64,000 nucleotides of DNA from Zootoca vivipara (taxonomy: Eukaryota). The stretch lies in contig NC_083277.1 of NCBI RefSeq assembly GCF_963506605.1, positions 70,928,001 to 70,992,000 of the forward strand. The letters run 5' to 3'. Of the stretch, positions 11,819-63,575 are shown piece by piece (within the stretch, counting starts at the first letter, position 1; every line of letters starts with the position of its first letter). Made by a program: the position numbers and the translations under genes. The notes below the pieces were generated by a model. The model made no database searches. It saw nothing but the letters and a program-made list of their open reading frames with translations, and was not told the DNA's origin.

Positions 11819-11906
11819 TTGCAGAATGAGGAGGAGCCTTGTGAGAACCTGCAAATTGTAAATGATTTCCCACCACCTTACAGCAGCATTTCTGGGGAGA
11901 ACGCAG
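11819..11906 (+). CDS. NDFIP1: NDFIP1 coding exon 2 (LQNEEEPCENLQIVNDFPPPYSSISGENA; PY motif 1)
   Basis: Acceptor ttgtttag, donor G|GTATTT; 88 nt; PPPY motif. Confidence 0.96.
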
Positions 11907-12651
11907 GTATTTATTTATTTTTTAAATGCTCACTGATTTTCGTTAGTCAAGTATCATTGCTAATGGTTTGAAGTTATGTGCAGGCAGCATAAATTCATGG
12001 GGAAATATGTGATTTCATAAACTACCTTTCTTGGCTCATCTTACATTCCTGAGTGCTATGTCTTAGCATAGAGAGGAAGGCAGCATTTCATTCTGTTGCC
12101 AATTTATATTATACTCCATTTGTGGCTGTAAAACTTGATGCTAATGGTGTGTGTATCAGGAAAATGAGAGGGAGAGGGAGAGTTTTTTTTGCAGCTGGGT
12201 GACTGGTCTGTTCTACGTAGTGTTGTGGACCCAAAAATTCTGTTGCCACCTCTGAACATACTTTGAAACCATGGATAATTATTCCTTGCTGCTTGCAGAG
12301 TGCATCTTTCTCCAAGTCTTCATTATATCTGTGAGGAATCTGCAGACATGCTTCGGTTGTGCTCAGCTGTTATGACAGGCTATGATCATCCTGCAAAGTT
12401 CCAAGCCATCTGGGTTTCAAATTGGCACCTGGGAATATATTTCCATGCAGTGTAGAATTAATAAGATGAGTCAAAACACCATAATCTACTTCTAAGTGAC
12501 ACTCATTATATGATTATGTTCATCATTTACATCAGCCTAGCCTTGGCAACCTTGCATTTTGGAAAGCAAATTAACATTGATTTGTCTGACGTGGTTGTGC
12601 ACAAGGAATCCTGCTTTATCCATTTCTGTACCTGAATAAAAGACCATAGAG

Positions 12652-12785
12652 CAGGGGTGGCTGATCAGTGACTCTCCAGGTGCTGTTGGACTACAACTCC
12701 CATCTGCCCCAGCCAACCTAGTGAGGGGTCAGGAATGATGGCAGCTGTAATCCAGTGGCATCTGAAAGGTCACAAATTAGCCACA
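12652..12785. mobile_element. Decayed palindromic hAT MITE
   Basis: Starts CAGGGGTGGC; contains the ggactacaactcccatc core. Confidence 0.55.
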
Positions 12786-12951
12786 TTATGTGCCATAAAG
12801 CTGGGTTGCTGCCATATACACAATACTTTCACTATAATCATTTCACCTATCCTTATTTTTTTATTATCAGGAAGAAATATTAGGCTGTAATTTTTAGTAT
12901 GTAGGTATTCTGATAATTAACCTATCTCTCTCCCATCTATTTTCCCCGCAG

Positions 12952-13082
12952 TGTATTTTGATTATAAAGATGAGGCTGGGTTTCCTAATCCCCCGTCTTA
13001 CAATGTAGCCACAACCCTGCCTACTTATGATGAAGCAGAGAGAACCAAGGCGGAAGCTACCATACCTTTAGTTCCTGGGAGG
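12952..13082 (+). CDS. NDFIP1: NDFIP1 coding exon 3 (VYFDYKDEAGFPNPPSYNVATTLPTYDEAERTKAEATIPLVPGR; PY motifs 2 and 3)
   Basis: Acceptor ttccccgcag, donor AGG|GTAAGT; 131 nt; PPSY and LPTY motifs. Confidence 0.97.
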
Positions 13083-13271
13083 GTAAGTGTGATATGATTT
13101 TGTGTCATGTGCCTTTAGTTATGGTATCTCAACCATGCGATTTTCAAGGAAGAGTAAGCATTGACGGTAGCTGCACTTTAGCTTTCTTTTGGGGGAAAGT
13201 ATTGTAAGCCTAATGCTGGTAAATTAGTTTGTCTGACATTTGCTAGCCACCTTGAATAATTTCTGTCTTAG

Positions 13272-13359
13272 GAGGAGGACTTTGTGGCACGGGATGACTT
13301 TGATGATACTGACCAGCTGAGGATAGGAAATGACGGCATTTTCATGCTGACTTTCTTCA
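13272..13359 (+). CDS. NDFIP1: NDFIP1 coding exon 4 (EEDFVARDDFDDTDQLRIGNDGIFMLTFF)
   Basis: Acceptor tgtcttag, donor A|GTAAGT; 88 nt. Confidence 0.97.
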
Positions 13360-13843
13360 GTAAGTACACTATAAAAAAACCCCTGAACCTTTGTGACAGA
13401 ACTGTTAACAAGATTGAACTAGCATTTTACTTTCTTTTTTTCAAAGAGGTGGTTCATCCATATACAGTAGTAGACTGTCTCTCCTGAATATTGATTATCC
13501 ACGTTGATTGTGTGCTACATGCCTGCTTGGGGTGTGGTTGCTGCCCTTGCTAGTGCAGATGGGCAACTTTTACCACGAGCCAGCCATTTCCGGGCAGAGA
13601 AGGGATTTGTCATTACTTGGGATGCATTTTATATTGGATGGTTAGGAATGAAACTTTCAGAAAAATGGAAGGGTGGAGCGACCATTTCTGCTTAAAAACA
13701 TATGAAGTGCACTGCTGGTTCAGATCAAAGATCCCTCTAGTCCAGCAGCCTATTTTCCAGTGAGATGCCCCCGTGATGCCCACAATTGGCACAAATTGAA
13801 ATCAATTGTGATTGCTGTATTCTCTCTTATTTTTTTTCCTTAG

Positions 13844-13968
13844 TGGCATTCCTTTTCAACTGGATTGGATTCTTTCTCTCTTTCTGCCTGACTACCTCAG
13901 CAGCAGGAAGATATGGGGCCATTTCTGGATTTGGTCTGTCTCTCATTAAGTGGATCTTGATTGTCAGG
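13844..13968 (+). CDS. NDFIP1: NDFIP1 coding exon 5 (MAFLFNWIGFFLSFCLTTSAAGRYGAISGFGLSLIKWILIVR; transmembrane segments)
   Basis: Acceptor ttttccttag, donor AGG|GTAAGT; 125 nt. Confidence 0.97.
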
Positions 13969-14324
13969 GTAAGTTGAGGAGTGGAAGAAGAAGGCTGCAT
14001 CAATAGGCGAGTGCACTGTGTATGATAGGCATTGCAACAAATAATTCCCTAGTGAGTTCTCCCTTTGTGAAAGTCCTAAAGACAAATCATGTACAAAGCA
14101 TATGAATATGTCTTTATTATATTAAGAAAATGCTGCTTGATTGAGTTACTAACCCTGTGTAAGCATTCTGAAATTCTGAACACCATGTTGCAACCACCAA
14201 ACATGATTTTTGAAATGGAAATTATGCAGATTTGTGCAGTGTGCTTGTTTCAGCTAATTTGCATAGCTTCAGACTACCAAAAGGCAGCTCCATTGAAGAG
14301 TAATTGAAAAAAAGATATCTGAAA

Positions 14325-14700
14325 TACAATCTTTATTATGGTCCATAGAGCCATCAATTTGTTACAAAGCGATATTCAATAAGGACACCCTGCCTTCAGG
14401 TTTCAGAAACATTTTGTTCAGACGTAGAGTTGGGATCATTGATTCTTAGAACCACCGATAGAAACTTCGCCACTGCTAGTGTTCTAACATTTGACCGGTC
14501 TTCCAATAGGAACTTGATATAATACTCCTCCGATTTTCCTGGGGTCGGGGCTAGCAAGGGTGAAATCAGTTCAGCCCAAGCTTGCTTGAACTTCACACAG
14601 TACAGTATAATATGTTTTATAGAGTCTGTGTCTTGGGCACACGAGCGCAGTCTTTCCTGGTAGGGGACTCCTCTCATCCTACCCTCCAGCACTGCAGATA
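14325..14700 (-). mobile_element. 3' fragment of a non-LTR retrotransposon (RTE-X/L1-like C-terminal zinc-knuckle region)
   Basis: Minus-strand peptide GVPYQERLRSCAQDTDSIKHIILYC resembles a decayed CCHC knuckle; AATAAA downstream on the minus strand. Confidence 0.55.
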
Positions 14701-14923
14701 TCTGAAATATCTGATGTGTAATTATGTGAGGTGAATGTTGTCTTGAAGGGCATGGATACTGAAAACACTCTGGTTTGGTGTAATGTATTCCCACAAATAG
14801 TGGGGACAGATTGGTTAGATAGGTTGATGTAAACGAGCAAACAAAGGCTGTGATGTAAACTTTACATTTTTGATGTACCGTATGTAAAATCGCAAGGAGA
14901 GACTAGATGCACTAGGTCTAACC

Positions 14924-15059
14924 CAGGCATCCCCAAACTTCGGCCCTCCAGATGTTTTGGACTACAATTCCCATCTTCCCCGACCACTGGTCCTGTTAGC
15001 TAGGGATCATGGGAGTTGTAGGCCAAAACATCTGGAGGGCCGCAGTTTGGGGGTGCCTG
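14924..15059. mobile_element. Palindromic hAT MITE (136 bp)
   Basis: TIRs CAGGCATCCCCAAACT / AGTTTGGGGGTGCCTG; exact TSD GTCTAACC (14916-14923, 15060-15067). Confidence 0.9.
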
Positions 15060-16096
15060 GTCTAACCCTTTGTAGTATTGGCCATGGTATGCCAAAATGA
15101 CCTGCCCATTTTATTGATTAGATTTTATTCAAAACTGCAATAAAAGTTTGAGAACCAGTTAAAATTTTGTGTGTGTGTAGGTTTCTAGCAGTGCAGCATA
15201 CCTTAATAAAGCCAGACTTGCCTGTTGTTGGATAGATAAAACTACATGTGTATAATGTAGTTGTTTGTTAAGTGGTGCTTAGAATTTCACTGGCCTTGTA
15301 CCTTTCTGGCCTTGTACCTTTCTGAATAGGAGATAGAGGTGAAAATGCCTATGTAGAAGCAATGATTTGAGTGGCTGAAAGGATTTACTGTCTGCAAAGC
15401 TTATACATGTACAGGTATCCCCTGCTGGAAGTTATTGGTGTTGCAGTGAAGTCACCCAATACATTCTGTATGCAGTTGATGGACTGGTTTGTGTCAGGGT
15501 GGCAATAGTTTGAGGATGTGCAAGAAGAAATGTGATTGAATTGATTTTAGAAGCCAGAGAACTCATGTTTGGTCCTAAATTGTACAGTCTTTTGTATTTC
15601 AGTAGTTGCATTTCGCACATGCAGGAGGTTTCTGTTTTTGGCCATTAAGCACAGTATTGTGGATTCTTGATTTACAGCCGCTCTTATGGATCTCAGGCAG
15701 AGAAGCTCTTTCACATCACCTGCCCCCTTAGAATTCCTCATCCAGAACAGATTCTGAGATTAGCTTTCATCCCAGACCATTGCAACAAGAAGTGCTTGTG
15801 TCTATCTGGAGAGTTACCTCTTCACCTAGAGATTTTTTGGATCATGTCCTTTCACTATGCAATATTGATTTTTGCAGAGATTTAGGAACTTAACCCTGAG
15901 TTAATGGGGGTGCGTGTGTATAATTTTACAAAATTTATATACTGCTTAATTATTATACTAAACAGTTTACAGAAGAAATGTGTGCGGTAGCAGTAATTTA
16001 TCCAGCAATAACTGCTGCTAGTAACAAAATGCCAGTGCAAAAATCCTGCAACTACCTACTGATTGACCTTATTCTCCCCCCGCTTTTTTTTTTTAG

Positions 16097-16163
16097 TTCT
16101 CCACCTATTTCCCTGGTTACTTTGATGGCCAGTACTGGTTGTGGTGGGTGTTCCTTGTGTTAG
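16097..16163 (+). CDS. NDFIP1: NDFIP1 coding exon 6 (FSTYFPGYFDGQYWLWWVFLVL)
   Basis: Poly-T acceptor ending AG, donor G|GTAAGT; 67 nt. Confidence 0.97.
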
Positions 16164-16377
16164 GTAAGTGTTAAACATTAATTTCAGTTTTTACTTTAGG
16201 AATCGTGCATGAACCTGCTCATATCTAGTTGTTATTCCTTACTTGTAATAATGATTGTAGTGTATTTTTAATGTTAATTTCAGAAAGGGGCTTTTCTGCC
16301 AATCTTTTAGGTTAGTTCCTATGCTAGGCACTTGAGAGAACTTTGGCAGATTTTTGAGATGTTCCTTTCAAGGAATC

Positions 16378-16393
16378 CTGCCATCTAGTGGAC
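16378..16393 (-). promoter_or_regulatory. Candidate CTCF site in NDFIP1 intron 6
   Basis: Reverse complement GTCCACTAGATGGCAG fits the CTCF core CC(A/G)(C/G)(C/T)AG(A/G)(G/T)GGC(A/G). Confidence 0.55.
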
Positions 16394-17559
16394 ATCTCAT
16401 TCTTTGCAGTAAGAAACCCACAACCTTGTTTGACTGTGGAAAATGACAGGCACAGTGCTGTATCTGTCTCTCCTCACTCCTGAGGGATAGTAGCAACTCT
16501 GGGAGTCGTGGTGATCAGGGGGGATACTGTAGTGCTCAGATCCTGCTTGCAAGCTTCCCATAGGCATCTGGGCACCATGAAGACAGGTGGGCCTTTTGTC
16601 TGATCCAGAAGGGCTTTTCTTAAGTTCTTAAAACAACACAGGAGGAAAGAATTAAATACCCCCTGTGATCAAATTGGCATCCACACCTGACTTTTTGAAA
16701 TAAAGAAGGAAAAAAGTGGGAAATTTGTTCCACAGGTCAGCTGGGTCACAGTTTAGCCCTCATTGACTTGGAAAAACATTAGTGATGTTAACTATTTAGG
16801 AAGAGGGGCTTTTTCAAAACTGTCAGTGGTGGGTCAGATCCTCTTGGGAAGCTTGGAGGATGTATTTATAACAGGCTCAGAAAAATGAACACCACAGATT
16901 TAGAAACAAGTTCAGGATGATAGCTGTGTAGTTAAATAATAGTGTGAAGAAAACCATAAAAGGCAAGAAAGCGTCCCTTAAAAGGAAGTAGTCTTGCCAA
17001 AATGAGAACAAAAACGATTCCTAATTCCAGCAAATAAATGTGTCAAGCAAGAAAAAGGGGGGGGAATGAGGAGAAAGGCATGAAAACAAATATTTCTTCA
17101 ACTACACCAGGAACAAGGAACTAGCCAGGGAAGCAATAGGAAGTTTGGACGCCAGAGTTGTGAAAGGAAAATTAAAGGGGGGCACAGAGATGCTCCAGTG
17201 GGTCCAAACATGAGCCTCAGGTTCACTTCCCCTTCCCCACTGTGCATGAAATGGTGAGATTTAAAACTTCCTTTTCTGATTTGCAAGGAACTGCTGTTTG
17301 TCATTGCATTAAAACCTGGGTTGCTTGTGACTCACTAACAAAGCATGGTTTGAACAAACCACCCTTTGCCAGGTTTGGATGCACTTTTCTTGTAAACAGG
17401 ACATGGAAACTTTAAATATATTCTCTCACTCAAAACAGTGTGTGGAGCATGCAAGGTTCATAGCCATAAGTCATAGTAGGACCAGATAGTGTTAACCCAA
17501 GAGCTTTTGCTCAAAATTGAAACTGCTGAATTTTCAATGGCAGTATACCACATCATTAA

Positions 17560-18085
17560 ACTCAACCTCCTGATGAGAGGATTGAAAGGTACATTAGCCA
17601 AAGATGTACAGATGTGCTTCTGATCATGGCCACAACCTGCCCCTCCAGGAGCAGAAACGAATCCAAAGACACTCCTGATCCTTATCAAGAGGATTGGAAG
17701 GTAACCAATATGAGATCATTTATTTCCAAAAAAGGGACTCAGAGGGAAGGGGAACTGAAGAAATAGCAGACCTTGTCAGGCTAACCCTTTTCTAAAGTTG
17801 GTTGAAAGTCATTTTGAAGCTGGAATTATTAAGCAAATAAAAGAATAAGTCTTTCTCAGTCAGCATGGCTTCTATAAAGGGAAGCCCAGCTCACCAACTT
17901 TTTCAATTCTTTTACTCAACAAACATAAAAGTGGTTGAGAAGATACATGGTTGGACATCCGAAAACATTTTGACAAAGTCCTTTACTGCAGGCTCCTGGG
18001 TAAATGTAGTAGTGATTGGATAAAAGAATGGATAATCCTGTGGATCAAAAACTGGTTAAGCAAAAGGGAACCAATTGTAGGAATG
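17560..18085 (+). mobile_element. Highly decayed CR1 RT-region relic
   Basis: Remnants cagcatggcttc...aaaggg and tttgacaaagtcc (QHGF / FDKV-like); no open frame. Confidence 0.5.
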
Positions 18086-18151
18086 ATCCTTGCCTTTCAG
18101 AAGAATGGAAGGTGTGTATGTGAAATATAACTCTTGATATTTTTTTGTTAG

Positions 18152-18255
18152 GCTTTCTCCTGTTCCTCAGAGGATTTATCAATTATGCAAAGGTTCGGAA
18201 GATGCCAGATACATTTTCCACTCTTCCCAGGACTAGAGTTCTCTTTATTTACTAA
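18152..18255 (+). CDS. NDFIP1: NDFIP1 coding exon 7 (GFLLFLRGFINYAKVRKMPDTFSTLPRTRVLFIY*)
   Basis: Acceptor ttttgttag; TAA at 18253-18255; donor AG|GTAATT after 18257. Total CDS 660 nt. Confidence 0.97.
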
Positions 18256-26521: not shown

Positions 26522-26989
26522 CAGGGCCGGCCCTAAGGCAAGGCTGGGTGGCGCAATGCGGCAGGGCACTGGGCCGCCAGGGGGTGCCGCGTTGCAGCGT
26601 CCGCCAGACAGCTGCGCTGCGCCGTGCCCGCCAGACAGCCCAGCCGCCCTCCCGCTCGCCCTGCTCCTTGCCTCCCTCCCTCCCGCCGCGGGTTCGAGTC
26701 CTGGTCTCAGCCTGGCAGGTTGGGTTGGGGGCATGAGGAGGACAAGAGGCCGGGCACTGCACGGCACCGCCCCCCCAGCAGAGGCCTCCATGCAGGAGGA
26801 GGTGGTGCCGGTGCCCCGGAGGACAACCAGGCAGCCTGGCCCACCCGCTGTGGCGCCCCTGAGCTCGTCCCACCCTCAGCGCCTGGCCCGCCCATGCCAT
26901 GTCCCTCCTCTGCGTCTGCGGTGAGTGGGGGGCGGCGGCGGCGGAGGGACCTTTGCACCATGGCGCTCGATGTGGTTAAGACTGGCCTG
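26522..26989. mobile_element. Non-autonomous hAT with GC-rich cargo
   Basis: Imperfect TIRs CAGGGCCGGCC / AGACTGGCCTG; exact TSD GGAGAATA (26514-26521, 26990-26997). Left end is homologous to the right end of 35610-36332. Confidence 0.85.
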
Positions 26990-27677
26990 GGAGAATACAT
27001 GCCTCTCCTTCAGACTCCAGGTGTTTACCTGAACGAACACTGGCGTGGAGTCTGCTTGGCTGTGCCAAAGGAAAAGAAGCGCCTTAACAACATGAAGAAC
27101 ACAAAAGTGCATGCTGTCATAATAACTTATGTGCCGCTCGGGGCAGAGGGAATAGCCGCGGATGCACAGCAGACAAAGGAACGTTTTGTGTGTTACTCTG
27201 AAAGTGTTCAAATAGGCCTGCCGGAAGCACCAGGAACAGAGTATCAGCACCTTATCTCCCACTGTGTTTATTTGCACCTAGCAATCAGCCACATGTTTAC
27301 CTTTGCCTTGATGGTGCAAAGTTTAGAATTTCATTTGGGTCACCGTGGGGCAACTTGGCTTGTCCTCTGCAGCAGAGGGCTTCCACGTGAGGTGAGGCGG
27401 GGGAGGGAGGCGTGGCTTTCTCGTGAACTTTTTGTTTACCATTTCCCTGGATTCTGCTTGGCTTGAATGGTTTATGTAGGAAAGTGCAGAAAGACACTAC
27501 AATTGACTGTGCTATGCACGGCACCTAGAACAAAATGCAGGCTACCTGCGTTTGCTGGGCAAGGCCTGCTGTGCTTCTTTGCCGTGTTGGCATGCATCAG
27601 AACATAAGAAGCGCCCCTCTGGATCAGGCCAAAGGCCCTTCTAATTCAGCATCCTGTTCTCACAGTGGCCAACCAGA

Positions 27678-30991: not shown

Positions 30992-32767
30992 CTGAAGGCA
31001 GCCCTGTACAAGGAAGTTTTTAATGTTTGATGTTTTACTGTTGTTTTATAATTTGTTGGAAGTCACCCAGAGTGGCTGGGGCAACTCAGTCAGATGGGCA
31101 GGGTATAAATAAATCATCATCATCATCAAGCAAAAGAGAATCACCCACATTAGGAGTCCTTTATTTTCAGAATTTTGATGCCTAATGAACTGGGTGGATG
31201 TGCGTTTCGATGCACATGGGGAGCTGCATTCTGGGCTGTCAACTGTTCTGTGTTAGTAGTTTGACCACAATTACAGCTGGATATACCAGCTTGGTATACC
31301 TCCAGGACTGGAATCACCATACCCGTACACGCCAGCTGCTGGGGAACAACAGTTGCCTCGCCTGTGGGCTTCCCTTCAGCATCTGGTTGACCACCCTGGA
31401 GGCAGGATGCTGGACCAGGTAGCCCTTGGGCCTGATCCAGCACAAGAGCTCTACTTGTATACATCAACTCTGTATACTTTGCACGTTATTTAGCTGTGAA
31501 AATAAGTTGAGAGGCTCCTCCAACATCAGTGACAGCTGGCCGAGACAGCTGGCCATATCGTCGTCATGTTATTTATGCCTGTGTGTGGATATTGTTCAAG
31601 CTGGGGTCGGAGAAGCGGAAGAACCTCTGGTTTCACTGCTGAGGTCAGGAAGGAGGGGTCTGAGGCGAGGGAAAGGGCCTCTGCTCTCCAGATGTATGTG
31701 CCTCAAGCCTGCATGTGTTCCCTCTCTTCGGAAACGAACTAATGAGAATGTGTTTTGGAAACAGCAGTTCCGCTCAGGAGAGCCGAGTGCTGCGCCTTGT
31801 ATATTCCCCTTTACAAGAGGGCTAGCATGAATCCAGCGCTGCGCTTCTCACCCTGTGGGGCAGGGTCACCTGAAAGAGGCACAGGGGAGCAAGAACAGCA
31901 AACTGAAGCAGCAAATTAATGCAGTGGAGAGGAAATATTTAGAGATATATATCCTGATGCAAAGAAATAAAGAATAATGCGCAAAGAGACAGGACCTGTC
32001 TGGTGAGAATCAGGAATGCTGGGTGAAAGACTGGCTGAAGGCTGGGGTGCTGGTGAATGGGATCAGGCAGAGTGAAAACCTTGGCTAGGGTAGGATGAGG
32101 CCAGAAGGAAGGAGAAACTAGGAGAGGGATAGAGTCAGGTAAAGGAGGTGGCGAGGCAACTCGAATCAGCTCCTCTGAGCTATTAGTGTTGTAATGGGCT
32201 TCCAAGACTTTGATGTGAAGAAGGAAATGAAAAAGGAGCTGCCTGTTTTGCACCCAGCACCAAACCATGAAAGGGCAATTGCATAGGTGGTGGTGGTGGT
32301 TGCATCAGGCACTCAAGGCATGCAGGCACTTGGGTTATAGTTAGCGCCCTACTTGAGTTCTTTTATAACAAAAAGTTCCTCCTGGTGGCTTCATACCTGA
32401 GCATTCATCTTGATGTGCTTGCATAAAGCTCACAGGGAGCTTAGATTGTGTCTGGTTTTTATTGAACCTTCTGAAGAGGTTATATGACATCGATCCTGAT
32501 CTGCTTGTATAGTGGCAGGGCAGGGCTGGTTCACCCATGAGGCAAAGTGAGGCAGCCGCCTCAGGGGACAGGATCCACAGCTATCGTACACCCCAGTGTA
32601 GATCTTGGTTCCCCCATTCTTTCTGGTGTAGACCTTCACTCACTCATAGTGGGGAGGGGAGTGCCATTTTGTGTTTCACCTCAGGTGCAGTGGTGATAGG
32701 TCTCATTGTCAATCATTTGTCCATCCCATACTTCTCAGTGCATTGTCGCCTCACTTTCTTAACTGCA

Positions 32768-32822
32768 AAAACAAACAAACAAACAAACAAACAAACTAAC
32801 TAACTAACTAACTAACTAACTA
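32768..32822. repeat. Compound (AAAC)n(AACT)n microsatellite
   Basis: Seen directly. Confidence 0.9.
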
Positions 32823-32825
32823 CAG

Positions 32826-34299
32826 CACGGGTGTCAAACACAAGGCCCGGGGGCCTAATCCGGCCCGCCAGACCTCGTCATGTGGCCCGCGTAGCCGCCG
32901 CCGACATTAGGCGCTGACAGTAGTTCTGGAGCCTGCGATTGGCCGAGGGTCAAAACCGGGGGCGGGGTTGCAGGCAGAGGCCGGGGCGCTGGAGCCGCGC
33001 TGACGGCCTTGGCCAGGGAATTTCAATTTCGAATGAGGCTGAGGGAGGCGGTGGCACAGCGGCCAGACGGGGAAGTGAGATGCAGGAGGAGGAGGAGGAA
33101 GCCCGCCGAGGAGGTAGGAAAGCCCTACAGGCGGCGCCGGCAAAGTTGGTGCCGGGACGGAGCAGCGCTGGATTTTTTTTTGCCGAGCTTTGCTGTTGTC
33201 TCCGAGAGCGAGTGAGGCGGCACTGGGGAGCCGCCGCCCGCCGCTTCCCTTCCTCTCCTCGGCTGCATCCGGGAGGTGGGCGAGAGAGCGGGTGAAAGGG
33301 ACGCGGAGTGAGCCTGAGGGGGAAGTAGGCGAAGCGCAACAGCCGCTCTCTTGATGGAGCCGGGTTTCTCTTCCCTCTTCCCCCATTTTCTCCTCATAGA
33401 CACTCGGGAGGGTGCCTGGCTTTTGCTCTGCCCCCCACCCCCGAGCCGCCCTTTGGCTTCTCAGTTCCGGCGGAGCTGCTCCCCAGGGGGCAGCCGGGAG
33501 GGAGGCGGCGGCGACGGCACGGGTTCCTGCTCTTCCCGCTCTGCCGCCGCCTCCTCTCAACCCCTCGTGATGTAGGGCTCCAGATGGAGTCGCCTCGCGG
33601 TTTGAGTAGGTGGGAGGGGAATTTTTTTTGGGGGGGGGAGGTTTTCAAGCCTCCTCTGCCTGCAGTCCCGGTAGGGAGAGGCGGCGGCGAAGACGACAAC
33701 AGCGCGGGTGGGGGGAAGAGCAGCTCTGAGGCGAAGATGCACGTCCGCTGGGGCTGCCACCGCCTTCCTCCCCGGGAAATCCGCTGCCCTCCCTCAGCGC
33801 GAGGGGAAGGGACTCTGGTGCTGAGGAGGGAGGATGCAAAAGCAAAGCAGGGAGTTGGCGCTGCACCGCATGTTCCTGCCCCTCTCCAAAGCATGGGGTG
33901 GGTTGCAGCGTGTGGCATCCTGCCTAGCGGGGTTTGGGTGTGCGCAGAGCGGGAGAGGGAAGCCCTCTTTCCATCTGCAGGTTTTTAATCCCAGCAGTGG
34001 CTTTCTCCTTCCTGCCGAAGGTTTAGTTGAGCCCCCCCCCCCCGAAGCCGTCGATCCCCACCTTTTGTTCAAATTTCCCTCGTTTACATCCCCTCCCCCA
34101 CACACGCCACGACGCAGGAATGTGATCCGCGTGGGGGCGGGAATGAGCTTACATTATTACAAAAAACTAATAATTGAATGCAGTGACAATAATTTATGAT
34201 AATAAAGAGTGGACACATAGTCCTACAGACACAACCGGCCCTTTGAGGGTGACCAAACTGCTGATGCGCCCCCCGATGAATTTGAGTTTGACACCCCTG
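32826..34299. mobile_element. Non-autonomous hAT (Buster/Charlie-type) carrying ~1.2 kb of CpG-island, promoter-like cargo
   Basis: 14-bp TIRs CACGGGTGTCAAAC / GTTTGACACCCCTG (1 mismatch); exact TSD AACTACAG (32818-32825, 34300-34307); subterminal GGCCC repeats; no transposase ORF. Confidence 0.88.
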
Positions 34300-35036
34300 A
34301 ACTACAGGGTGACAGAGCACTTTAATGCACGAATTCCACCAAGATAAATTTCTGGTTTGCCTCTGAATCCCTCCCACAAAACATTGAGAAGTATGGGGTA
34401 GCTTGCTCTGCTGTCCCATCAGTATTTCTGATGTGAGAGGGCCAGAAAACCATTGTGAGGGCGCAGAAGGTATGCATGTATTGGTGGGGGCGGGGCGGGA
34501 CAAAACTGCCCCAAAAGGACAATCTTCAGATGACTTCCGTTACTCAGCCAAGTGCGCCCCAAGGACCAGGCTGTTTCTGGAAATATCATCTGTTGGCCTC
34601 CCATGCAGTTTGGTTTTTTGTAAATACCTAATTTTGAGCCTTACAACTCTTTCCCAAGGGTGCAACTCATTTCGGCAAGCTGTGAAATCTGCAGAGCCTC
34701 CTCTTAAAATGGGCCATAAGCACAGCCCCCCCCCCCCCCGTTGCTGCTGAAGCTCTGTGCACCAAAAGCAACAGAAGTGCACGCAACTGACCGTTTGAAA
34801 CCCAACAACAACAAAGCACAAAAAGCCAGAAGCAGCACACAATCTATAATTAAAGACTCGGTGGCTGTAATGGGAATGGATTTCTGAACTCAAGGCAAAT
34901 CCCTTCTGGCACTTCCTGTGCCTAATAACCATCAACAGAAAAATCAAACAAATCCAATTGGCTCCAGCTGCTAAATCTATAACTAGCAAAAGATTGCAGC
35001 AGAGGCAAGAAAGGAAAGCAAACCCAAGCAACATCA

Positions 35037-35037
<1 letters not shown>

Positions 35038-35078
<41 letters not shown>
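35038..35078. repeat. (AC)n microsatellite
   Basis: Seen directly. Confidence 0.95.
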
Positions 35079-35080
<2 letters not shown>

Positions 35081-35282
35081 GTGAATGTGTGTCAAAAGCT
35101 GGAAAACAGCTTATTGGCTAGGGGCAGTGATTAGGAACCTTGCCTCAGCTGGCCCTGTGTAAGTACAGTGACTAGGAGGAGGCCAAAGCCCTACCATTAG
35201 GCAGAGTGAGAGGGCAGCCTCAGGCAGCTGAAATGGGGTGTCTTGAAATGGAAGCAAATTGGTAGTTATTTAGTTTAATATT

Positions 35283-35283
<1 letters not shown>

Positions 35284-35330
<47 letters not shown>

Positions 35331-36520
35331 TACCACCTTTCATTCAGGGATCACAGGGTGCTTTACAAAACAACAACACAAAAATACATACCATAATAGC
35401 AAACATAAACAATGCTCCCCACACAGTTTAAAAGACAATAGATTAATTAGCCAAAGGCCTAGGAGAAGAGGAATGTTTTTGCCTGTCACCTAAAGATATG
35501 CAACGAAGGGGAGTGGCAGTCCTTGAGACATTACGGTGCTGGGCTGTGTAACGCTTTATATGTCAAAACCAGCACTTGGAATTGGGCCCAGAAACAAATT
35601 GGCTGTCCGCAGGGCCGTCTTAAGCCTATCCAGCCCCGTGGTTCAAAGATCCCTCTGGCACCCCCCCCCCCCCCGTTCCCCAGAGTTGCAGACCTTGGTG
35701 CTGCATGAAGAAGGGCCTTTTCCACTTATCTCTGTCTTGAATCTCCCAATATTCAGCTTCGCGGGATGTCCGCGAGTTCGAGTGTTAGGTAAGAGAAGGA
35801 GGAAAACACTTTCCTCTGCCCACTTTCTCCATGATTGCCATGATCGTGTCACTTTTCCTGCGCCTTTTCCCCAAACCAATAGAGCCCCAAACCTTTCCTC
35901 GCAGCGGAGTGGCTCCTCTGGCCTCTTTACTCCCACCCACTACTATAATTGCAGCAATTTCTCACCGCCCGCGCGGTGGGCGCCTGCACTCTGCACCCCC
36001 TCAAGAGGCGCGCGCCCCTCAGCTGAAGAGGTTCCGGGGCCGAAGGCAGCAGGCACGGGCTCCTTTCCTCACCATCACTCCTCCTCCTCCGATGCCGCAC
36101 ATGGTACCTGCGGGGGCGGAGTGGCCTCGCAGAGCAGGCAGCCGCGGACCCATTTGCACCCACAGCAGCCCCTGGGCTTGCCTCCCACTCCCCGTCCTCT
36201 GGAGGCGGAACTAGCAGCATTGGCGGCTGCCACCGCTTCCTCCTCCTCCATCCCAACCCCGGCAACAGCGCCCCCGGTGGCCAGGTGCCCTGGCGCATTG
36301 CGCCACCCAGCCCAGGCCTAGAGACGGCCCTGGCTGTCCGTGCAGTTGGGCCTGGAGCGGTGTAATATGCTCAAATTTTCTTGTCCCAGTGAGCAACCTG
36401 GCTGCTGAATTCTGCACCAGCTGAAGTTTCTGAACCATTTTCAGAGGGAGCTCTATGGATGACACATTGCAGTAATGTAACCCAGAGGTTAGCAGAGCAT
36501 AGACGACAGAAGTCAGGCTA
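35284..36520 (-). mobile_element. Old L2 3' fragment with microsatellite tail, split by the hAT at 35610-36332
   Basis: Minus-strand LPLKMVQKLQLVQNSAARLLTG...HITPLQAQLHGQP joins ICFWAQFQVLVLTYKAL across the insert; (AAT)n at 35284-35331. Confidence 0.8.
35610..36332. mobile_element. Non-autonomous hAT with GC-rich and CR1-derived cargo
   Basis: Perfect 11-bp TIRs CAGGGCCGTCT / AGACGGCCCTG; exact TSD GCTGTCCG (35602-35609, 36333-36340). Confidence 0.92.
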
Positions 36521-37154
36521 ACCTAACCACTGCCAGAATCTAATAGAAGGCAGTAATTTGACTTCCACAGATACTATGGATGTTGCCTTGGTGGGAAAGG
36601 GTGCCATTCGCTTTTCTACCTCAGGCTGCAAAATATCTTGCTCTGGCCCGGCCAGCAATGAGTATAGCACTGCAGCAGACTTAAAAGCCCTTCAATGTCT
36701 GGTTAGCGCATCATACTTTTGAGCTATCTTTAGGGGGTTAAAATGAGCTGCAGTTCCACAGGGCTCCATTTCAGAACCCATTTCGAATGCTCGGTTCAGC
36801 CTCAGAACACATGAAGCAATTACAGGAAAGAGAGTTCCTCTGAGCATTTGGCAAATGTCATTTGCAGTGATCTTCACTCCCTCAGCTGACTAACGACAGC
36901 CAAAATCTGAACCTCTCGCCCATTTGGGGACAGCTGTTACAGTTCAGAAGCTACAGTTTCCTGGCTCGAGTTTCAGCACTTTTCATTTCAAGATGTTAAG
37001 TGCTGGCCAAAATGGTTAAAAGCCAGGCCAAAATGGTCAGGGGCCAAAAGGACTCATCTTCAGGATGTCTCTCCCTTCACCTGGGCCTGCCAGCTCTCCT
37101 TGTGGCAAAAGGATTGCTTATCCTCTTCCTCTGCCTGGGGAACAGAAAGCCACT

Positions 37155-37497
37155 CAGTGGCGTACCAAGCCCAGGCGGTACACGGTGGAGTGCGCATGTG
37201 CGGCACCCCTTACGGCCTGCGCATGTGCGGCACCCCTTACAGACTGCACATGTGCGGCATCCTGCACGTGCGCACTCCGTACGGGGTGCCGCCGTGTGTA
37301 AGGCATGTTCGGCATGTTCGGCAGACCGTATGGACTGCGCACGTGTGGGATACTGCACATGCGCAGTCCGTACGGGCTGCTGCTTGTGCATGGCGGCCGT
37401 ATAGGCTGCCGCATGAGCAGCACCCCAAGTTTCACCTCCCTCCAGGGCGGCACCCAGGGCGGTCTGCTCCCGTCGCACCCCCCTTGCTACATCCCTG
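37155..37497. mobile_element. hAT MITE with internal TGCGCATGTGCG repeats
   Basis: Imperfect TIRs CAGTGGCGTACCAAG / CTTGCTACATCCCTG; exact TSD AAGCCACT (37147-37154, 37498-37505). Confidence 0.85.
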
Positions 37498-39807
37498 AAG
37501 CCACTGTAGACCAAGGGAGTTGGATCAGGGGGTCAGTCAGCACAGCTGGCCATGTTCTGGGGCTCACACCCCAGCAGGATGGGGTCTTCCATGTAGAGCC
37601 TTGTGGACCTGCTTTTCCTCACCATTGCTCATCTGCCCCCCCTCTTGCTGGCTAATTCAATTGCTATTCCATTGGTTAAAGATCAACTTACAGCTTGCTA
37701 CTCTTTAATGACACCCAGAGTCTACTGTCCGAGATTCAAGCCTCACTCTGTCCTATAGTGTGGACGAGTAACACTGCCATTTGAGCTCTTTGCTGTTGTA
37801 TTGTTTCGGTGTGGGAGAGAGGGGTGGTGGTGGTTATTGGTTTGTTTTGTCTTTATCTTGCATTTTCATTCTGTGAACTGCCCTGAGATCAACAGATGGA
37901 GGGCAGTATGCAAATTTAATAAAGAAAAATATTGTTTTATCATTTCAAACTTGTACACAGCCTTGAGACAGATTGTATTAGGTGGTACATATTCCACCTC
38001 GTTTTAAACAGTGCCAAAATGTAATTGGTGTTGATGCTTTTCAGAGCTCCAAGGAGAGGTGATTTCATAGAAAGGGGGCTGCCACAGAGAAAACTCTCCC
38101 TCTGGTCACTGCTAACTGAGATGACCACACAACTATGAGAATAATGGTTCCCCCCACCTCTTTATTAGGGTTGGTACACATAGTGGACTCAGGGCACCTT
38201 AGTAGTTGGTTCCACAGTCATAACATTTAACGTCACTTATCTTTTTGTGCCAATCTGCCACTGTTTGCTGATCAGAAGATGACAACTATAGTCAGTCAAG
38301 TGTTTCTTATGGCTGATCGACCAGTGAACATGGTACAAAATATAAAAACCACAGCCTCAGGGGAGCTAAATATTAATGATTAACTCTGGCAAGTTAGGAA
38401 CTAACATTCATAGCAGGTCTGAGAGATATGATAACGTTCAAATATTTTGCCACCTGTTTGGTAATCGATCTATTAGTCCCCTCAAGGAAGACAGGTCTTG
38501 AAAGGCTGACCGGAATCCTCTGCTCCTAGTAGGATCAGCTATGTGTTCTCTAACCACTTGATAAAATCTGCACCAGATGAATGTATGGGATCTTGGAATA
38601 GTTGCGAAGGTGTGGCGGAATGGTGCCTGATGATGATTCTGGTTCATCATGGGTTAATCCCTCACTCCCATTCTAGACAAGTGTTCCCTGAGAGGCGGAG
38701 CTTGGGGGCATTCTAAATGGCAGTTGGGAGTTGGGGATTGACAGTTGGGAGTTAGGGAGTTGGTAGAGAGTAGAGTGTTAAAGAGGGATGCAGGAGCTGT
38801 ATGAAGAAAACTGTGTTAAATAAAAAAGAAGATATGTGCTTTTAAGAACCAAAGAAACTCATGTTTATAAGTTAAATAATAAAGTTAAATGTGCTTAAAT
38901 GTTCACTGACTCGGCAGTGTCTCAGTACCTTCAGAGGTGTGACAAAGAGGGGAGAACAAAGCTTTCCTGGGGAAGAGGAAACTGTTTGCTGTTTCTCCTG
39001 TCATACAAAGGGCTGGTTAGCGAAGCCGAAGGAGCCACATAGTTGCCTAAGGGAGAGGCACACTGTAGCAGTAGGGATCCCAGGGAGGGAGACCCCACTG
39101 GTGGCAATAGGTTTCGAACGCAGAGCCTGAGGTACTCTGGAGACAAGTCCAATTTGGACTCTGGAGGTTTTTTTCTCCTGTTTGTGGAGAAGCACAGGGA
39201 GAGCCTCTGAGGTTAAAGCAGTGAGGTGGGGGATCCATCACAGAAGGCAGCACCTATCCCTGAGGAGATACCATCTAGCATGTTCTGGTGCTAGCAGAGA
39301 AGCAGTGGCAGCTTGGTTGGGCCTGGGCACTGGCATCAAACAAACATTGCTACAGTCAACAAGATAAGCAGAGCGCTGGCTTTAGTCAACAGGTCTGGGA
39401 AACTGAGGGCCAAACTACACAACATTCTATAAGCCCTTTAAAAAATTCAAATAGCATTAGTTGGCAGGTGTGTAAAAAAAATAAAATGAACAGAATCAAG
39501 GCAAGCATGGAGATGGGATATAACCCTGTGTTTTCTTATTACTGTGGTCCTGAGGAAAATATCTTTTCTGAAGCTGCTGTTTGCCGCTATCCCCCTGCTC
39601 CCACCCAAAAAAGCAAATACTGTACCAGCTACAGAAGCAGCATTTTCTTCAGGATCTGACTCTTTTTCTCTCCCTTACTGTAGCAAGGGAGGAAAAAGAA
39701 TCAAATCTCCTCTTTCTGTCTGTCCTAGACTTGTTACCTCTTACCCCCCTACACAACTGATACATTTGGCGTTTTTAAAATTAAAAAATAAATAAATACC
39801 TGCATGT

Positions 39808-61364: not shown

Positions 61365-62891
61365 TCTTTCTCTGTTTTCCAAAACAAAACAAAATCCTCA
61401 TATGCACACAGTGCCCGCCTACTTGAAAACACTGTGGCATGCTTTGAGGGTCACTAGTTCAAGTTTGATTACATTGGTAAAATGGTCTAATGCATGTGTA
61501 AAGTGGTTTCTCCTTTGCCATTGTGGTGACGGGGAGAGTAGGCGGTTCTGCTTTTCCTTGAATCCGTTGCTATAGAGCTCTTTGCTGGTTGGGCCCATAG
61601 TCTGTGCTGTCCTGACTGCTCTGAGTTTTCAGTCAGTTTCCCTTTCAGAAGGTTTACAAAGGGCTGAGAATGGAGCGCTTATGTGGAGAGCAATCGCAAG
61701 GAACTGTTCTCTGTGGTTATTCATTTGTTCCCTAAGATGTGCATCCTGTTCTTCAGTGGGCAACTGGCATTCCCAGGGCAAGGACATAGGAAGCTGCCTT
61801 GCACTGAGCCCAGGCAACTGGTTCGGCTAGCTTAGTATTGCCAACACTGGCAGTGTCTCTCCAGCATTTCAGAGACGAGTTTTTCCTTGCCCCACCTAGG
61901 GATGCTGGGGTTTGAACCTGGGCTTTCTGCAAGCAAAGCATGTACTGTGCAGATGAGCTTCGGCCCTTATAAATAAAATTAGTGAGAGATGTTAACATTC
62001 AGCAATGAACCTTCAAGCATGCATAAGTGGTTTAATGGCCTTGTTTGCACTTAATGCTGAGCCAATAGTTTAACTATGGTTTATTTGAACCTTGTTTTGT
62101 TTTCTGCAAAAAAACCAAAAAACAAAACCCATGATGTGAGGCCATAGTTGGGTTGGATTATAAACCACAGCTTGTTTTAACTATGGTTTAGAGTTATATC
62201 TGACACAACAGTCTTGCTTAACCAGACACTTATCAAGCTACAAATGTCCAAGGCAAGAGCAGCTGGAAAACAGATGACGTTTCAGAGGAGAAATCTATGA
62301 CTTGTTTGCTCATCTGTGAAATGACTCACGGTTTGCTGAACAAATTATGACTTAGTGCTATGCACCAATACAGCCAAATTGTTACTTGTGATTTTTCGAC
62401 CCCTTTCTATGGCACCCAGGGCATTTGTTCAAAAATAAGCTTATTGGAGTTCATTGCATGTGCAACACATAGTTATGGATGTGGTCAAGGCATAGCCATT
62501 ACACCTGAGGGTGGAATCTTATCTATTTCATAGATTTAAGTGGGATTGCACTTGTCAGTATAGACCAAGATGAAAGACCTTCCAGTTAAGCCTCAGATGT
62601 TTTAGGAAAGTAGCAGTCTAACTGAATAAGCAGAGGCTGGATGTGACGGTGCCATGCACTTGCCTTTAGGGCAATATGAATACATAGGAAGACTTTGAAA
62701 CACTGGACTCAGCTAACTACTGCACTGTCTGCTACTTAAAAGCAGATTACACTTAATAAAACTCGCATAACCAGGGCACTTGCATTATTTAAAATAGACT
62801 TAGCAGTGTTTTTAGTGATTTGGAATATTTAGGGCATTCAGATATTCATAACCCCAGTTGTCCCTGGAAATGCATTTGCATGGACAATGGA

Positions 62892-63101
62892 TAGGGTTTC
62901 CAGACTCAATAGAGGACAGGACTTCTGTGCCTTTTAATTGCCCTGCTCTCTTTTGAGTCTGGAAACCTTAAAGAGAAACCAGCAGACCCTTTGTTTAATT
63001 TCCAAGCAAAGGTGGTTTCTCTTTAAGGTTTCCAGTCTCAAAAGAGAGCAGGGCAATTAAAGGCACAGAAGTCCTGTCCTCTATTGAGTCTGGCAACCCT
63101 A
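62892..63101. mobile_element. Fold-back hAT MITE (TAGGGTT-type TIR, Blackjack-like)
   Basis: ~90-bp near-perfect inverted arms; exact TSD ACAATGGA (62884-62891, 63102-63109). Confidence 0.92.
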
Positions 63102-63575
63102 ACAATGGAGCATGTGAGTTGAGTTTCCAGCTGCAGCTTCTCAGTGGCGATTTTTGTGGAAATGCATTTTCAGCTCTCACTGTAATGGGAATGATTTTGG
63201 GGTAGTAGTGGAAGGATCCACAATCCTATAAAATGCTTACATGAGCAAAATGGGAAACTCAATGGGCCTTTCTTCTGAGTAGCCACTGCACAATTTGTGA
63301 AGACATGATGTGCATATAGTTCTCCTGCCTCAAGGTGGAGAGAAGAATTTAATGTTATTGTGGTTCCTATTCACCTGAGTATTGTGTTGGTTATTCCTAT
63401 CTGGAACACAGACAACTGGGAATTCATTCTTCCCTTGCTAGCTCAGTTCAAACTATAAGGAGCTGTGCCAGAGCACAATTATGAATTTGTGTTCCCTTTC
63501 ATTTTTACAGGGATTCTACAGGAGACATCAGTGATGAATGTTGCTTGTTTTTTATGTTTATTTATTATCACCTAC

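What the first reader, a model, noticed from the sequence alone, without database searches (positions are those of the whole stretch)
32818..34307. An entire promoter-like CpG island packaged inside a hAT transposon (Pack-TIR-like capture)
Seen: what looks like the 5' end of a second gene is exactly bracketed by 14-bp TIRs (CACGGGTGTCAAAC / GTTTGACACCCCTG) and a perfect 8-bp TSD AACTACAG. Only ~80 bp on the left and ~150 bp on the right look like hAT ends. The ~1.2 kb between is CpG-dense, has no transposase ORF, and carries a reverse CCAAT box (ATTGG 32938-32942), GC boxes (32959-32967, ~34133-34142), an ETS-like GGAAGTG (~33071), GGA/GCC 5'UTR-like tracts, donor-like sites (GAG|GTAGGA ~33113, TAG|GTGGGA ~33609) and acceptor-like sites (~33399, ~33980). 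I found no downstream coding exons for it in the remaining 30 kb. Established: 8-bp nnnTAnnn TSDs mark Buster/Charlie hATs; host-DNA capture by TIR elements is well known in plants (Pack-MULEs) and much less documented in vertebrates. Inference: a mobile, captured promoter/first exon that creates an orphan CpG island ~9 kb downstream of NDFIP1. Intact CpGs imply recent insertion or escape from methylation.
Basis: partly seen in the sequence, partly recalled or inferred. Interest (0 to 1): 0.85.

Follow-up and report, generated by a model that had tools for sequence, protein, structure and literature searches.

The report
Ordinary copy of abundant hAT transposon
This is one copy of a cut-and-paste (hAT) transposon family that lacks a transposase gene and occurs on the order of a thousand times in this lizard genome; its CpG-rich middle is the family's own sequence, so nothing shows that a promoter was captured at this spot.

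Summary
The structure is real. A 1,474-bp element (32826-34299) has CAG-type terminal inverted repeats and a perfect 8-bp duplication, AACTACAG. It has no transposase, and its interior is 64% GC with CpG o/e 0.71.

The key inference fails. In DNA contigs of the same species the whole interior has about 1,300-2,600 times the depth of the single-copy flanks. A second species holds the same interior joined to both hAT arms at about 98% identity. So the "cargo" is the core of a high-copy non-autonomous hAT family.

No coding exon, protein relative, Pfam domain or Rfam family was found in it. GC-box, CCAAT, ETS and acceptor counts are at shuffle level. No RNA reads lie on the flanks.

About half of the listed sites where this copy differs from the family majority are CpG-to-TpG/CpA losses. 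The copy therefore decays like methylated DNA: young, not protected.

An ancient capture of host DNA before amplification cannot be excluded.

The scan has flagged elements of near-identical length and description elsewhere in this genome (s1-849355, s1-856578, s1-848860). They are probably further copies; I did not check them.

The parts
32770..32822 (.). (AACT)n microsatellite at the target site; its last unit overlaps the left TSD
   Evidence: Tandem Repeats Finder: period 4, 13.2 copies; sequence read.
32818..32825 (.). Left target-site duplication AACTACAG (nnnTAnnn pattern)
   Evidence: One of only two AACTACAG in the window. It directly abuts the left TIR.
32826..32843 (+). Left terminal inverted repeat, CACGGGTGTCAAACACAA; base 3 is C where the right TIR has the canonical G
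   Evidence: Inverted repeat I3, 18 nt, 89% complementary; pattern search; alignment 16 of 18.
32826..32890 (+). Left arm (65 bp) shared with other subfamilies; holds three GGCCCG motifs about 20 bp apart (32844, 32862, 32884), which may be transposase-binding repeats
   Evidence: Loose ends 'behind 32890' in X1 (17 contigs) and X14 show other interiors joined to this arm (table 7). Three of the window's five GGCCCG lie here.
32891..34147 (.). Family-specific CpG-rich core (1,257 bp): no ORF with relatives, no transposase remnant.
   Evidence: Summed contig depth 75,682-148,053 against 54-63 on single-copy flanks (table 2). Organism-B contigs 32863-33357, 33328-33545 and 33692-34167 match at about 98% (table 8). 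GC 0.645, CpG o/e 0.71. No Pfam, protein or Rfam match.
34001..34147 (.). Right-hand 147 bp of the core, also held next to the right arm in a more distant organism (C)
   Evidence: X19 contig of 303 nt lies on 34001-34299 with 7 substitutions and 5 gaps. Nothing of organism C lies on the rest of the core (tables 2 and 8).
34148..34299 (+). Right arm (152 bp, AT-rich), shared with other subfamilies and the most abundant part of the element
   Evidence: Loose ends 'before 34148' in X1 (13 contigs) and X21 (37 reads). Depth 277,000-373,000.
34282..34299 (-). Right terminal inverted repeat; reverse complement CAGGGGTGTCAAACTCAA
34300..34307 (.). Right target-site duplication AACTACAG
   Evidence: An X1 contig at single-copy depth (47.7) runs from 34277 across the junction to 35002 with no substitution (table 8).

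Best explanation
The stretch 32826-34299 is one ordinary, fairly young copy of an abundant non-autonomous hAT family of the Charlie/Buster type.

Shown:
- It has 14-18-bp CAG-type TIRs, a 65-bp left arm with three GGCCCG repeats and a 152-bp right arm.
- It has a 1.26-kb CpG-rich core with no coding capacity and a perfect 8-bp TSD.
- The core is as repeated as a transposon family should be, on the order of 10^3 copy equivalents in this species.
- The core is linked to both arms in a second species.
- This copy has lost CpGs relative to the family majority.

Inferred:
- A transposase supplied in trans by an autonomous hAT binds the TIRs and subterminal repeats and excises the element.
- It reinserts the element at a staggered 8-bp cut in an nnnTAnnn target, here at the end of an (AACT)n microsatellite 14.6 kb downstream of an NDFIP-type gene.
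- The core rides along as passenger sequence of the family.
- After insertion this copy was methylated and is decaying like any other transposon.

It looks like a CpG island only because it is young. Where the family's core first came from is not resolved. It could be a deleted autonomous element, filler DNA or an old capture of host DNA.
For: Structure: and (4 TSD+TIR elements against 0.43 expected).

Repetition (table 2): in DNA contigs of the same organism (X1) the flank bins read 54-63, the core bins 75,682-148,053 and the arms 228,000-373,000. Ten to 39 distinct contigs cover each listed site (table 3).

Linkage (table 8): organism-B contigs run 32863-33357 across the left arm/core boundary and 33692-34167 across the right one. 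They carry 23 substitutions over about 1,340 aligned bases, or 1.7%.

Family majority differs from this copy (table 3): at 21 listed sites all or nearly all X1 contigs read another base than the window. The organism-B contig agrees with them at 20 of the 21; it keeps the window's base at 34167.

CpG decay: at 10 of these 21 sites the family has CpG. At 8 of the 10 the window copy has the TpG/CpA transition product.

No gene content: no Pfam domain in 8 ORFs; no relative of the 174-aa ORF; none of the 217-aa ORF among 1.84 billion representatives; no Rfam family at gathering score.

Promoter motifs at shuffle level.

RNA: 0 reads on the flank bins, and only 11 of 369 laid reads are at least 99% alike.

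Literature: lizard hAT non-autonomous families with shared ends, family-specific central regions and more than 1,000 copies are described (PMC3014272).

Scan notes of 1,476, 1,473 and 1,460 letters with the same description lie elsewhere in this genome. These are leads, not checked.
Against: - The tool warns that summed contig depth is not a copy number, so only the order of magnitude is safe.
- I could not fetch a second copy to read its own TIRs and TSD. No vertebrate genome is searchable here, and the look-up of earlier findings by sequence was blank.
- The family was not matched to a named Repbase or Dfam entry. Its TIR is not among the Anolis families in the parts of Tables 1-2 of PMC3014272 that I read.
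- No autonomous partner was seen.
- The same left arm is joined to other GC-rich interiors (table 7, place 32890). That is what a family that repeatedly picks up GC-rich DNA would look like. It keeps an old capture open as the core's origin.
Confidence: 0.88

Rival explanations
1. Amplified Pack-hAT. The core was once copied from a host gene's CpG-island promoter or non-coding first exon into a hAT element. That chimera then amplified to about 10^3 copies, and this locus is one descendant copy. This concerns the core's origin and is compatible with the best explanation for the locus.
For: The core meets CpG-island composition criteria. The same left arm carries other GC-rich interiors (table 7). 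Earlier scan notes report other hATs in this genome with gene 5' ends (EPB41L4B, OSBPL10, AP4E1, UNC13B), which I did not check. Donor-like GGTRRG sites are mildly raised, 6 vs 1.9. hAT is the commonest Pack-TIR carrier in animals (PMC8277862).
Against: No parental locus, coding exon or protein relative was found. GC-box, CCAAT, ETS and acceptor counts are at chance. Organism C shares 147 bp of the 'core' contiguous with the right arm, which suggests an older element backbone there. Among 370 animal Pack-TIRs only four were multicopy, and the example described had three copies (PMC8277862). A thousand-fold case would be without precedent.
Confidence: 0.2
2. The core is what remains of the autonomous element's own non-coding regions, such as its promoter/5' UTR and 3' region. 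The element would be an internal-deletion derivative. This also concerns origin only.
For: Most non-autonomous hAT families in the one lizard studied in detail are internally deleted autonomous copies (PMC3014272). The stretch 34001-34147 travels with the right arm in organism C.
Against: No transposase remnant was found: no hAT dimerisation, BED or other Pfam domain in the eight longest ORFs. No autonomous partner was seen. 64% GC over 1.2 kb with CpG o/e 0.71 seems unusual to me for hAT non-coding DNA; that is my own knowledge, not tested.
Confidence: 0.3
3. One reading: a capture specific to this copy, giving a unique orphan promoter and first exon of a second gene at this locus.
For: Only the composition and the presence of common promoter-like motifs.
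Against: Core depth is 1,300-2,600 times the flanks. The core is present and joined to the arms in another species. There is no RNA on the flanks and almost none at 99% identity or more. No downstream exon or Pfam domain was found in ORFs of 130 aa or more up to 64 kb. The CpG decay pattern also argues against it.
Confidence: 0.02
4. A native CpG island that happens to lie between two unrelated hAT fragments.
For: None beyond composition.
Against: The identical 8-bp TSD directly abuts both termini and occurs nowhere else in the window. The core is high-copy and travels with the arms.
Confidence: 0.01

Closest known systems
Non-autonomous hAT families of the lizard Anolis carolinensis (for example hAT-N4_AC, hAT-HT2N3_AC, hAT-HT2N1_AC; Novick et al., Genome Biol Evol 2010/2011, PMC3014272)
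   Same: 8-bp TSD with a central TA preference (NYYTARRN, NTNTANAN). CAG-initiated 14-16-bp TIRs. No ORF. Lengths of 0.7-1.5 kb. More than 1,000 copies for several families. Low divergence from the consensus (0.7-2.5%). [quoted passage not shown]
   Different: The TIR differs (CAGGGGTGTCAAAC here; CAGGGGTCCCCAAAC and others there), so it is not one of the families in the table rows I read. The host appears to be a lacertid, according to earlier scan notes. That paper does not mention a CpG-island-like core; a text search for 'GC-rich' gave 0 hits.
Animal Pack-TIRs (Tan et al., Nat Commun 2021, PMC8277862)
   Same: A TIR element, most often hAT, whose interior is not transposase. One documented case is a 5' UTR fragment (CAPSL in hAT-N8_XT) that transposed to three sites.
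   Different: A Pack-TIR is defined by a traceable host parental copy, and none is shown here. Only 4 of 370 were multicopy, at a few copies, whereas this core is at about 10^3-fold depth. It behaves as a family consensus, not a recent duplicate.
Pack-MULEs of plants (my own knowledge, not tested here)
   Same: TIR elements carrying GC-rich 5' gene fragments that can amplify.
   Different: A different superfamily (Mutator, 9-10-bp TSD, long TIRs). Parental genes are identifiable. They are found in plants.
The neighbouring hAT at 35610-36332 in this window
   Same: 8-bp TSD (GCTGTCCG), CAG-type TIRs, a GC-rich non-coding interior, arms at very high depth.
   Different: It belongs to another family (TIR CAGGGCCGTCT). 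Its interior is at only about 22-30 times single-copy depth (1,300-1,750 vs about 58). It is much closer to a true low-copy Pack-type element than the finding is.

Membership tests
hAT superfamily (non-autonomous member) | 8-bp target-site duplication | tested here: met
   Perfect AACTACAG on both sides, the only two copies in the window.
hAT superfamily (non-autonomous member) | Short TIRs beginning 5'-YARNG | tested here: met
   The right terminus reads CAGGG. The left reads CACGG, one deviating base. TIRs match 13 of 14, or 16 of 18 extended.
hAT superfamily, Buster/Charlie branch | Target preference nnnTAnnn | tested here: met
   AACTACAG has TA at positions 4-5. A single site is compatible with the preference but does not prove it.
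hAT superfamily (autonomous element) | hAT transposase ORF (BED finger, RNase-H-like core, hAT C-terminal dimerisation domain) | tested here: not met
   No Pfam domain in the eight longest ORFs. The element is therefore non-autonomous.
hAT superfamily (non-autonomous member) | An autonomous partner with matching termini in the same genome | not testable with these tools
   No vertebrate genome collection can be searched here.
Repeat family (multi-copy transposon) | The whole element, interior included, is present in many copies | tested here: met
   Depth is 75,682-373,000 on the element against 54-63 on the flanks. There are 10-39 contigs per listed site, and organism-B contigs span both arm/core boundaries.
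Pack-TIR / Pack-hAT (host-gene capture) | The interior is traceable to a TIR-less parental host locus | not testable with these tools
   No genome search is available. Among the loose ends shown, none marks a TIR-less parent, but 665 rows were not displayed.
Pack-TIR / Pack-hAT (host-gene capture) | The interior contains recognisable gene sequence (exon or coding fragment) | tested here: not met
   No Pfam domain. No homologue of the 174-aa ORF or the 217-aa ORF. No Rfam family.
CpG island (composition criteria: over 200 bp, GC over 50%, o/e over 0.6) | Composition | tested here: met
   1,241 bp, GC 0.645, o/e 0.71.
Functional (unmethylated, promoter) CpG island | Protection from germ-line methylation | tested here: not met
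   At 10 of the 21 listed family-versus-copy differences the family has CpG, and 8 of those are TpG/CpA transitions in this copy. This is indirect; there are no bisulfite data.
Functional (unmethylated, promoter) CpG island | Transcription starting at the locus | tested here: inconclusive
   One RNA run was sampled at 6%. There were 0 reads on the flanks, and the reads on the element come mostly from other copies. One tissue at shallow sampling cannot show silence.

The most novel reading that the evidence does not exclude
The family's 1.26-kb core began as a host gene's CpG-island promoter or non-coding first exon. A hAT element captured it and then spread it to about a thousand sites in lacertid genomes. 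That would be by far the most amplified Pack-type capture known in an animal, and a source of dispersed CpG-island-like DNA that might seed new promoters.
Probability: 0.2. Interest if true: 0.6.

Novelty: new member of a known kind. Interest (0 to 1): 0.2.

Why it matters
Mainly as a correction. The 'orphan CpG island downstream of NDFIP1' is a repeat copy, not a hidden gene start, and it should not be annotated as a promoter or counted as a gene-capture event.

It also matters for the scan. Elements of about 1.47 kb with this description were flagged at least four times in this genome, probably because the same family keeps being rediscovered.

Some interest remains. A DNA transposon that scatters about a thousand 1.2-kb CpG-island-like blocks could distort CpG-island counts and methylation maps in these lizards. 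If the core is a captured promoter, it would be an exceptional case of amplification.

I could not match the family to a named library entry, but with this abundance it is very likely already in repeat libraries.

Tried and rejected
- Protein homologue search of the 174-aa ATG ORF 33394-33918(-): 834 word-sharing candidates, none significant.
- Full HMMER search of the 217-aa ORF 32907-33560(-) against 1.84 billion representatives: 0 hits.
- Pfam on the eight longest ORFs of the element: nothing.
- Pfam on ten ORFs of 130 aa or more elsewhere between 22.8 and 48.3 kb: nothing, so no downstream coding exon was found.
- Rfam at a permissive E-value: only sub-threshold miRNA-like hairpin matches, 28.7 bits against a gathering score of 60. 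Rejected as chance in GC-rich DNA.
- BLASTN of the element against the rest of the window: no second copy. This is expected at roughly one copy per Mb.
- Paper searches for the TIR string: 0 hits for the 14-mer. The 25 hits for the 11-mer look like unrelated PCR primers, judging by their titles.
- Search of earlier findings by sequence: blank.
- The outer 22-nt inverted repeat 32725-32746 / 34376-34397 was considered as the ends of a larger element. Rejected: the right arm lies in single-copy DNA (depth 54) and no TSD goes with it.
- The bacterial promoter/terminator scan is irrelevant to a vertebrate.
- Literature search for lacertid hAT-Charlie descriptions: nothing specific.
- Orthologous empty site: not testable. 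The organism-B run laid nothing on the flanks.
Full report
OBSERVATION

AACTACAG lies at 32818-32825 and again at 34300-34307. These are the only two occurrences in the 64-kb window. Directly inside them lie CACGGGTGTCAAAC (32826-32839) and, on the reverse strand, CAGGGGTGTCAAAC (34286-34299). These are the only two matches to that 14-mer at up to 2 mismatches. They extend to 16 of 18 matching bases.

A window-wide scan for an identical 8-mer pair enclosing at least 10 of 12 complementary termini finds four elements. Block-wise dinucleotide shuffles give 0.43. The TSD has TA at positions 4-5, and the right terminus begins CAGGG. Both fit the hAT rules (YARNG termini; nnnTAnnn targets of the Buster/Charlie branch, from established knowledge).

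The interior 32910-34150 has GC 0.645 and CpG o/e 0.71. The flanks have o/e 0.26-0.31. The target site is the end of an (AACT)n microsatellite.

THE DECISIVE RESULT

I asked which public runs hold 32700-34450. I then laid four runs on 31900-36900 at 88% likeness or more:
- X1, DNA contigs of the same organism A
- X14, a second organism B
- X21, raw RNA reads of organism A
- X19, a more distant organism C

In X1 the single-copy flanks read 54-63. One contig of 1,689 nt and one of 781 nt match without a substitution. The second crosses the right junction at 34277-35002.

The seven bins inside the supposed cargo read 75,682-148,053. The bins holding the arms read 228,000-373,000. The tool warns that summed contig depth is not a copy number, so I take only the order of magnitude. 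The core is some 1,300-2,600 times as abundant as the flanks, and the arms are two to three times more abundant still.

Ten to 39 distinct contigs cover each listed site. This is therefore a family of variants, not one mis-laid contig.

In organism B nothing lies on the flanks, but four contigs tile the element:
- 32863-33357
- 33328-33545
- 33692-34167
- 34148-34299

They carry 23 substitutions in about 1,340 aligned bases (1.7%). The first contig crosses the left arm/core boundary and the third crosses the right one. So the core is physically part of the hAT element in another species too.

The dip in organism-B depth at 33570-33736 is an artefact. The contig ends at 33572 and 33692 carry Nextera adapter letters.

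Organism C holds only 34001-34299.

FAMILY STRUCTURE

Loose ends 'behind 32890' (17 X1 contigs, 2 X14 contigs) show the same 65-bp left arm joined to other interiors in other copies. Loose ends 'before 34148' (13 X1 contigs, 37 RNA reads) show the same for the 152-bp right arm. Those attached to the left arm are also GC-rich (table 7).

Several subfamilies share these arms, and the present core makes up roughly a third to a half of the copies.

The left arm holds three GGCCCG motifs about 20 bp apart. That is three of only five in the whole window. This is the pattern of subterminal transposase-binding repeats; that reading is an inference.

THIS COPY COMPARED WITH THE FAMILY

Table 3 lists 21 sites within the element where all or nearly all X1 contigs read a different base from the window. 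The organism-B contig agrees with them at 20 of the 21; at 34167 it keeps the window's base. These are private changes of this copy.

In one search I checked their contexts. At 10 of the 21 sites the family has a CpG. At 8 of those 10 the window copy has the transition product TpG or CpA.

CpGs make up about 14% of the bases but take about half of the changes. That is the signature of germ-line methylation and deamination (inference from established knowledge). The copy is CpG-rich because it is young: about 1.7% overall and about 0.9% at non-CpG sites. It is not protected from methylation. Only the 40 best-supported of 152 differences were displayed, so these counts are a sample.

IS THERE ANY GENE OR PROMOTER CONTENT?

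- Twenty-one ORFs of 30 aa or more overlap the element, as expected in 64% GC DNA.
- The eight longest have no Pfam domain.
- The 174-aa ATG ORF has no homologue.
- The 217-aa ORF has none among 1.84 billion representatives.
- Rfam gives only sub-threshold hairpins.
- Against 300 dinucleotide shuffles of the core, four motif classes are at chance: GC boxes (4 vs 2.9), CCAAT (1 vs 1.6), ETS cores (2 vs 0.7) and acceptor-like sites (1 vs 1.1).
- Only donor-like GGTRRG is raised, 6 vs 1.9, with 5 of 300 shuffles reaching it. In a G-rich sequence I give this little weight.
- No ORF of 130 aa or more downstream has a Pfam domain.

RNA

About 6% of run X21 was read. There are 0 reads on the flank bins. 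Of the 369 reads laid on the 5-kb stretch, 11 are at least 99% alike.

A strand-specific block of reads over 32902-33068 carries 32907A, 32910A and 32911C throughout. The 32910A variant is at about 10% of DNA depth. The block therefore comes from one variant copy elsewhere, not from this locus (table 3).

One shallowly sampled run cannot prove silence. It gives no support for promoter activity, either here or family-wide.

CONTEXT

An NDFIP-type gene lies upstream on the + strand:
- PY-motif exons lie near 11870 and 12990.
- The last coding exon ends at 18252 (…RTRVLFIY, then stop).
- It matches Pfam NEDD4_Bsd2 with E = 0.001, below the gathering score because the piece is short.

The element is therefore 14.6 kb past the stop codon. 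There were no RNA reads at 31900-32400, so it is probably intergenic.

WHAT IT IS AND HOW IT WORKS

It is a non-autonomous hAT element.

Shown: termini, TSD, lack of a transposase, family-level repetition of the whole element, and CpG decay of this copy.

Inferred:
- It is mobilised in trans by an autonomous hAT transposase that recognises the TIRs and subterminal repeats.
- It moves by cut-and-paste, with an 8-bp staggered target cut.
- After insertion it is methylated and decays.
- The core is passenger sequence of the family.

The origin of the core is open. I put about 0.3 on remnants of an autonomous element's non-coding regions. The link between 34001-34147 and the right arm in organism C points that way, although there is no transposase remnant. 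I put about 0.2 on an old capture of host GC-rich DNA that was then amplified. The rest goes to unknown or filler DNA.

COMPARISON WITH WHAT IS KNOWN

Novick et al. (PMC3014272) describe the same kind of thing in Anolis:
- hAT non-autonomous families of 0.3-1.5 kb
- CAG-type 14-16-bp TIRs
- NYYTARRN-type TSDs
- more than 1,000 copies for several families
- 0.7-2.5% divergence from consensus
- families 'nearly identical at their ends' that 'differ in their central region'

The TIR here is not among the table rows I read, so I do not file the element under a named family.

Tan et al. (PMC8277862) found 370 Pack-TIRs in 100 animal genomes, 208 of them hAT. Only four were multicopy, for example a 5' UTR fragment present at three sites. 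Membership of that class needs a traceable host parent. I could not test this, and the gene-content criterion was tested and not met.

EARLIER NOTES OF THIS SCAN (leads, not evidence)

- Three notes on other pieces of this genome describe hAT elements of 1,476, 1,473 and 1,460 letters carrying about 1.2 kb of CpG-island-like DNA (s1-856578, s1-848860, s1-849355).
- The one that was followed up leaned toward a family-own core but could not test it. The near-identical length fits my depth result, and I think they are copies of this family. I could not compare sequences.
- Other notes report hATs carrying identifiable gene starts (s1-852634, s1-852026, s1-850894, s1-850068). I did not check these.
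- Another note states that the genome is a lacertid's (s1-850912).

VERDICT

It is a real, young, non-autonomous hAT insertion that looks like a CpG island. The 'captured promoter' is the core of a high-copy repeat family, with no sign of gene content or of activity at this locus. Interest is low. The residual novel reading is an ancient promoter capture amplified a thousand-fold, at about 0.2 probability.

No N run was touched.

Noticed in passing
window 35602-36340 (element 35610-36332): A second hAT of another family (TSD GCTGTCCG, TIR CAGGGCCGTCT) with a GC-rich interior. Interior depth at 35741-36241 is only 1,300-1,750, about 22-30 times single copy, while its arms are at 67,000-113,000. 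It sits inside a high-copy repeat (35407-35602 and 36341-36575). Many X1 joints skip about 740-820 bp there, meaning copies of that host repeat without the insertion. This looks much more like a genuine low-copy Pack-type element than the finding does.
   Followed up: partly
window 14916-15067: A 136-bp hAT-like MITE (14924-15059) with perfect TSD GTCTAACC and TIR CAGGCATCCCCA / CAGGCACCCCCA. It lies between the PY-motif exon near 12990 and the last coding exon at 18124-18252, so it is probably inside an intron of the NDFIP-type gene.
   Followed up: no
window 62884-63109: A 210-bp TIR element (62892-63101) with perfect 8-bp TSD ACAATGGA and TAGGG-type termini, TAGGGTTTCCAG / TAGGGTTGCCAG.
   Followed up: no
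window 11819-18255: Exons of an NDFIP-type gene on the + strand. PY motifs (PPPY near 11870, PPSY near 12990) and the last coding exon 18124-18252, which matches Pfam NEDD4_Bsd2 with E = 0.001. The stop codon is 14.6 kb upstream of the element, not 9 kb.
   Followed up: partly
window 32902-33068 (reads from elsewhere): RNA reads of X21 over this part of the core are strongly one-stranded (first mate on minus 20.1 vs 0.3). All carry 32907A, 32910A and 32911C. So at least one variant copy of the family elsewhere in the genome is transcribed in the element's + sense (tables 2-3).
   Followed up: no
window 34148-34299 (reads from elsewhere): 37 RNA reads enter the right arm from a different interior, and 50 leave it into one fairly consistent AT-rich flank (agreement 0.77-0.84). 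This points to a short relative sharing only the right arm that sits inside an expressed transcript elsewhere (table 7).
   Followed up: no
window 32401-32734: An unrelated moderately repeated stretch just left of the element, at depth 6,210 and 860 against about 58. I did not identify it.
   Followed up: no
window 1-1200, 26801-27200, 37001-37600: Other CpG-island-like patches (GC 0.60-0.69, o/e 0.64-0.90). The first probably marks the NDFIP-type gene's 5' end. The other two have no Pfam-bearing ORF, and I did not test whether they are repeats.
   Followed up: no
X14 contig ends at window 33572 and 33692: The loose ends read Nextera adapter letters. The organism-B contigs are therefore cut by library adapters, which explains that run's depth dip at 33570-33736 (table 7).
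   Followed up: yes
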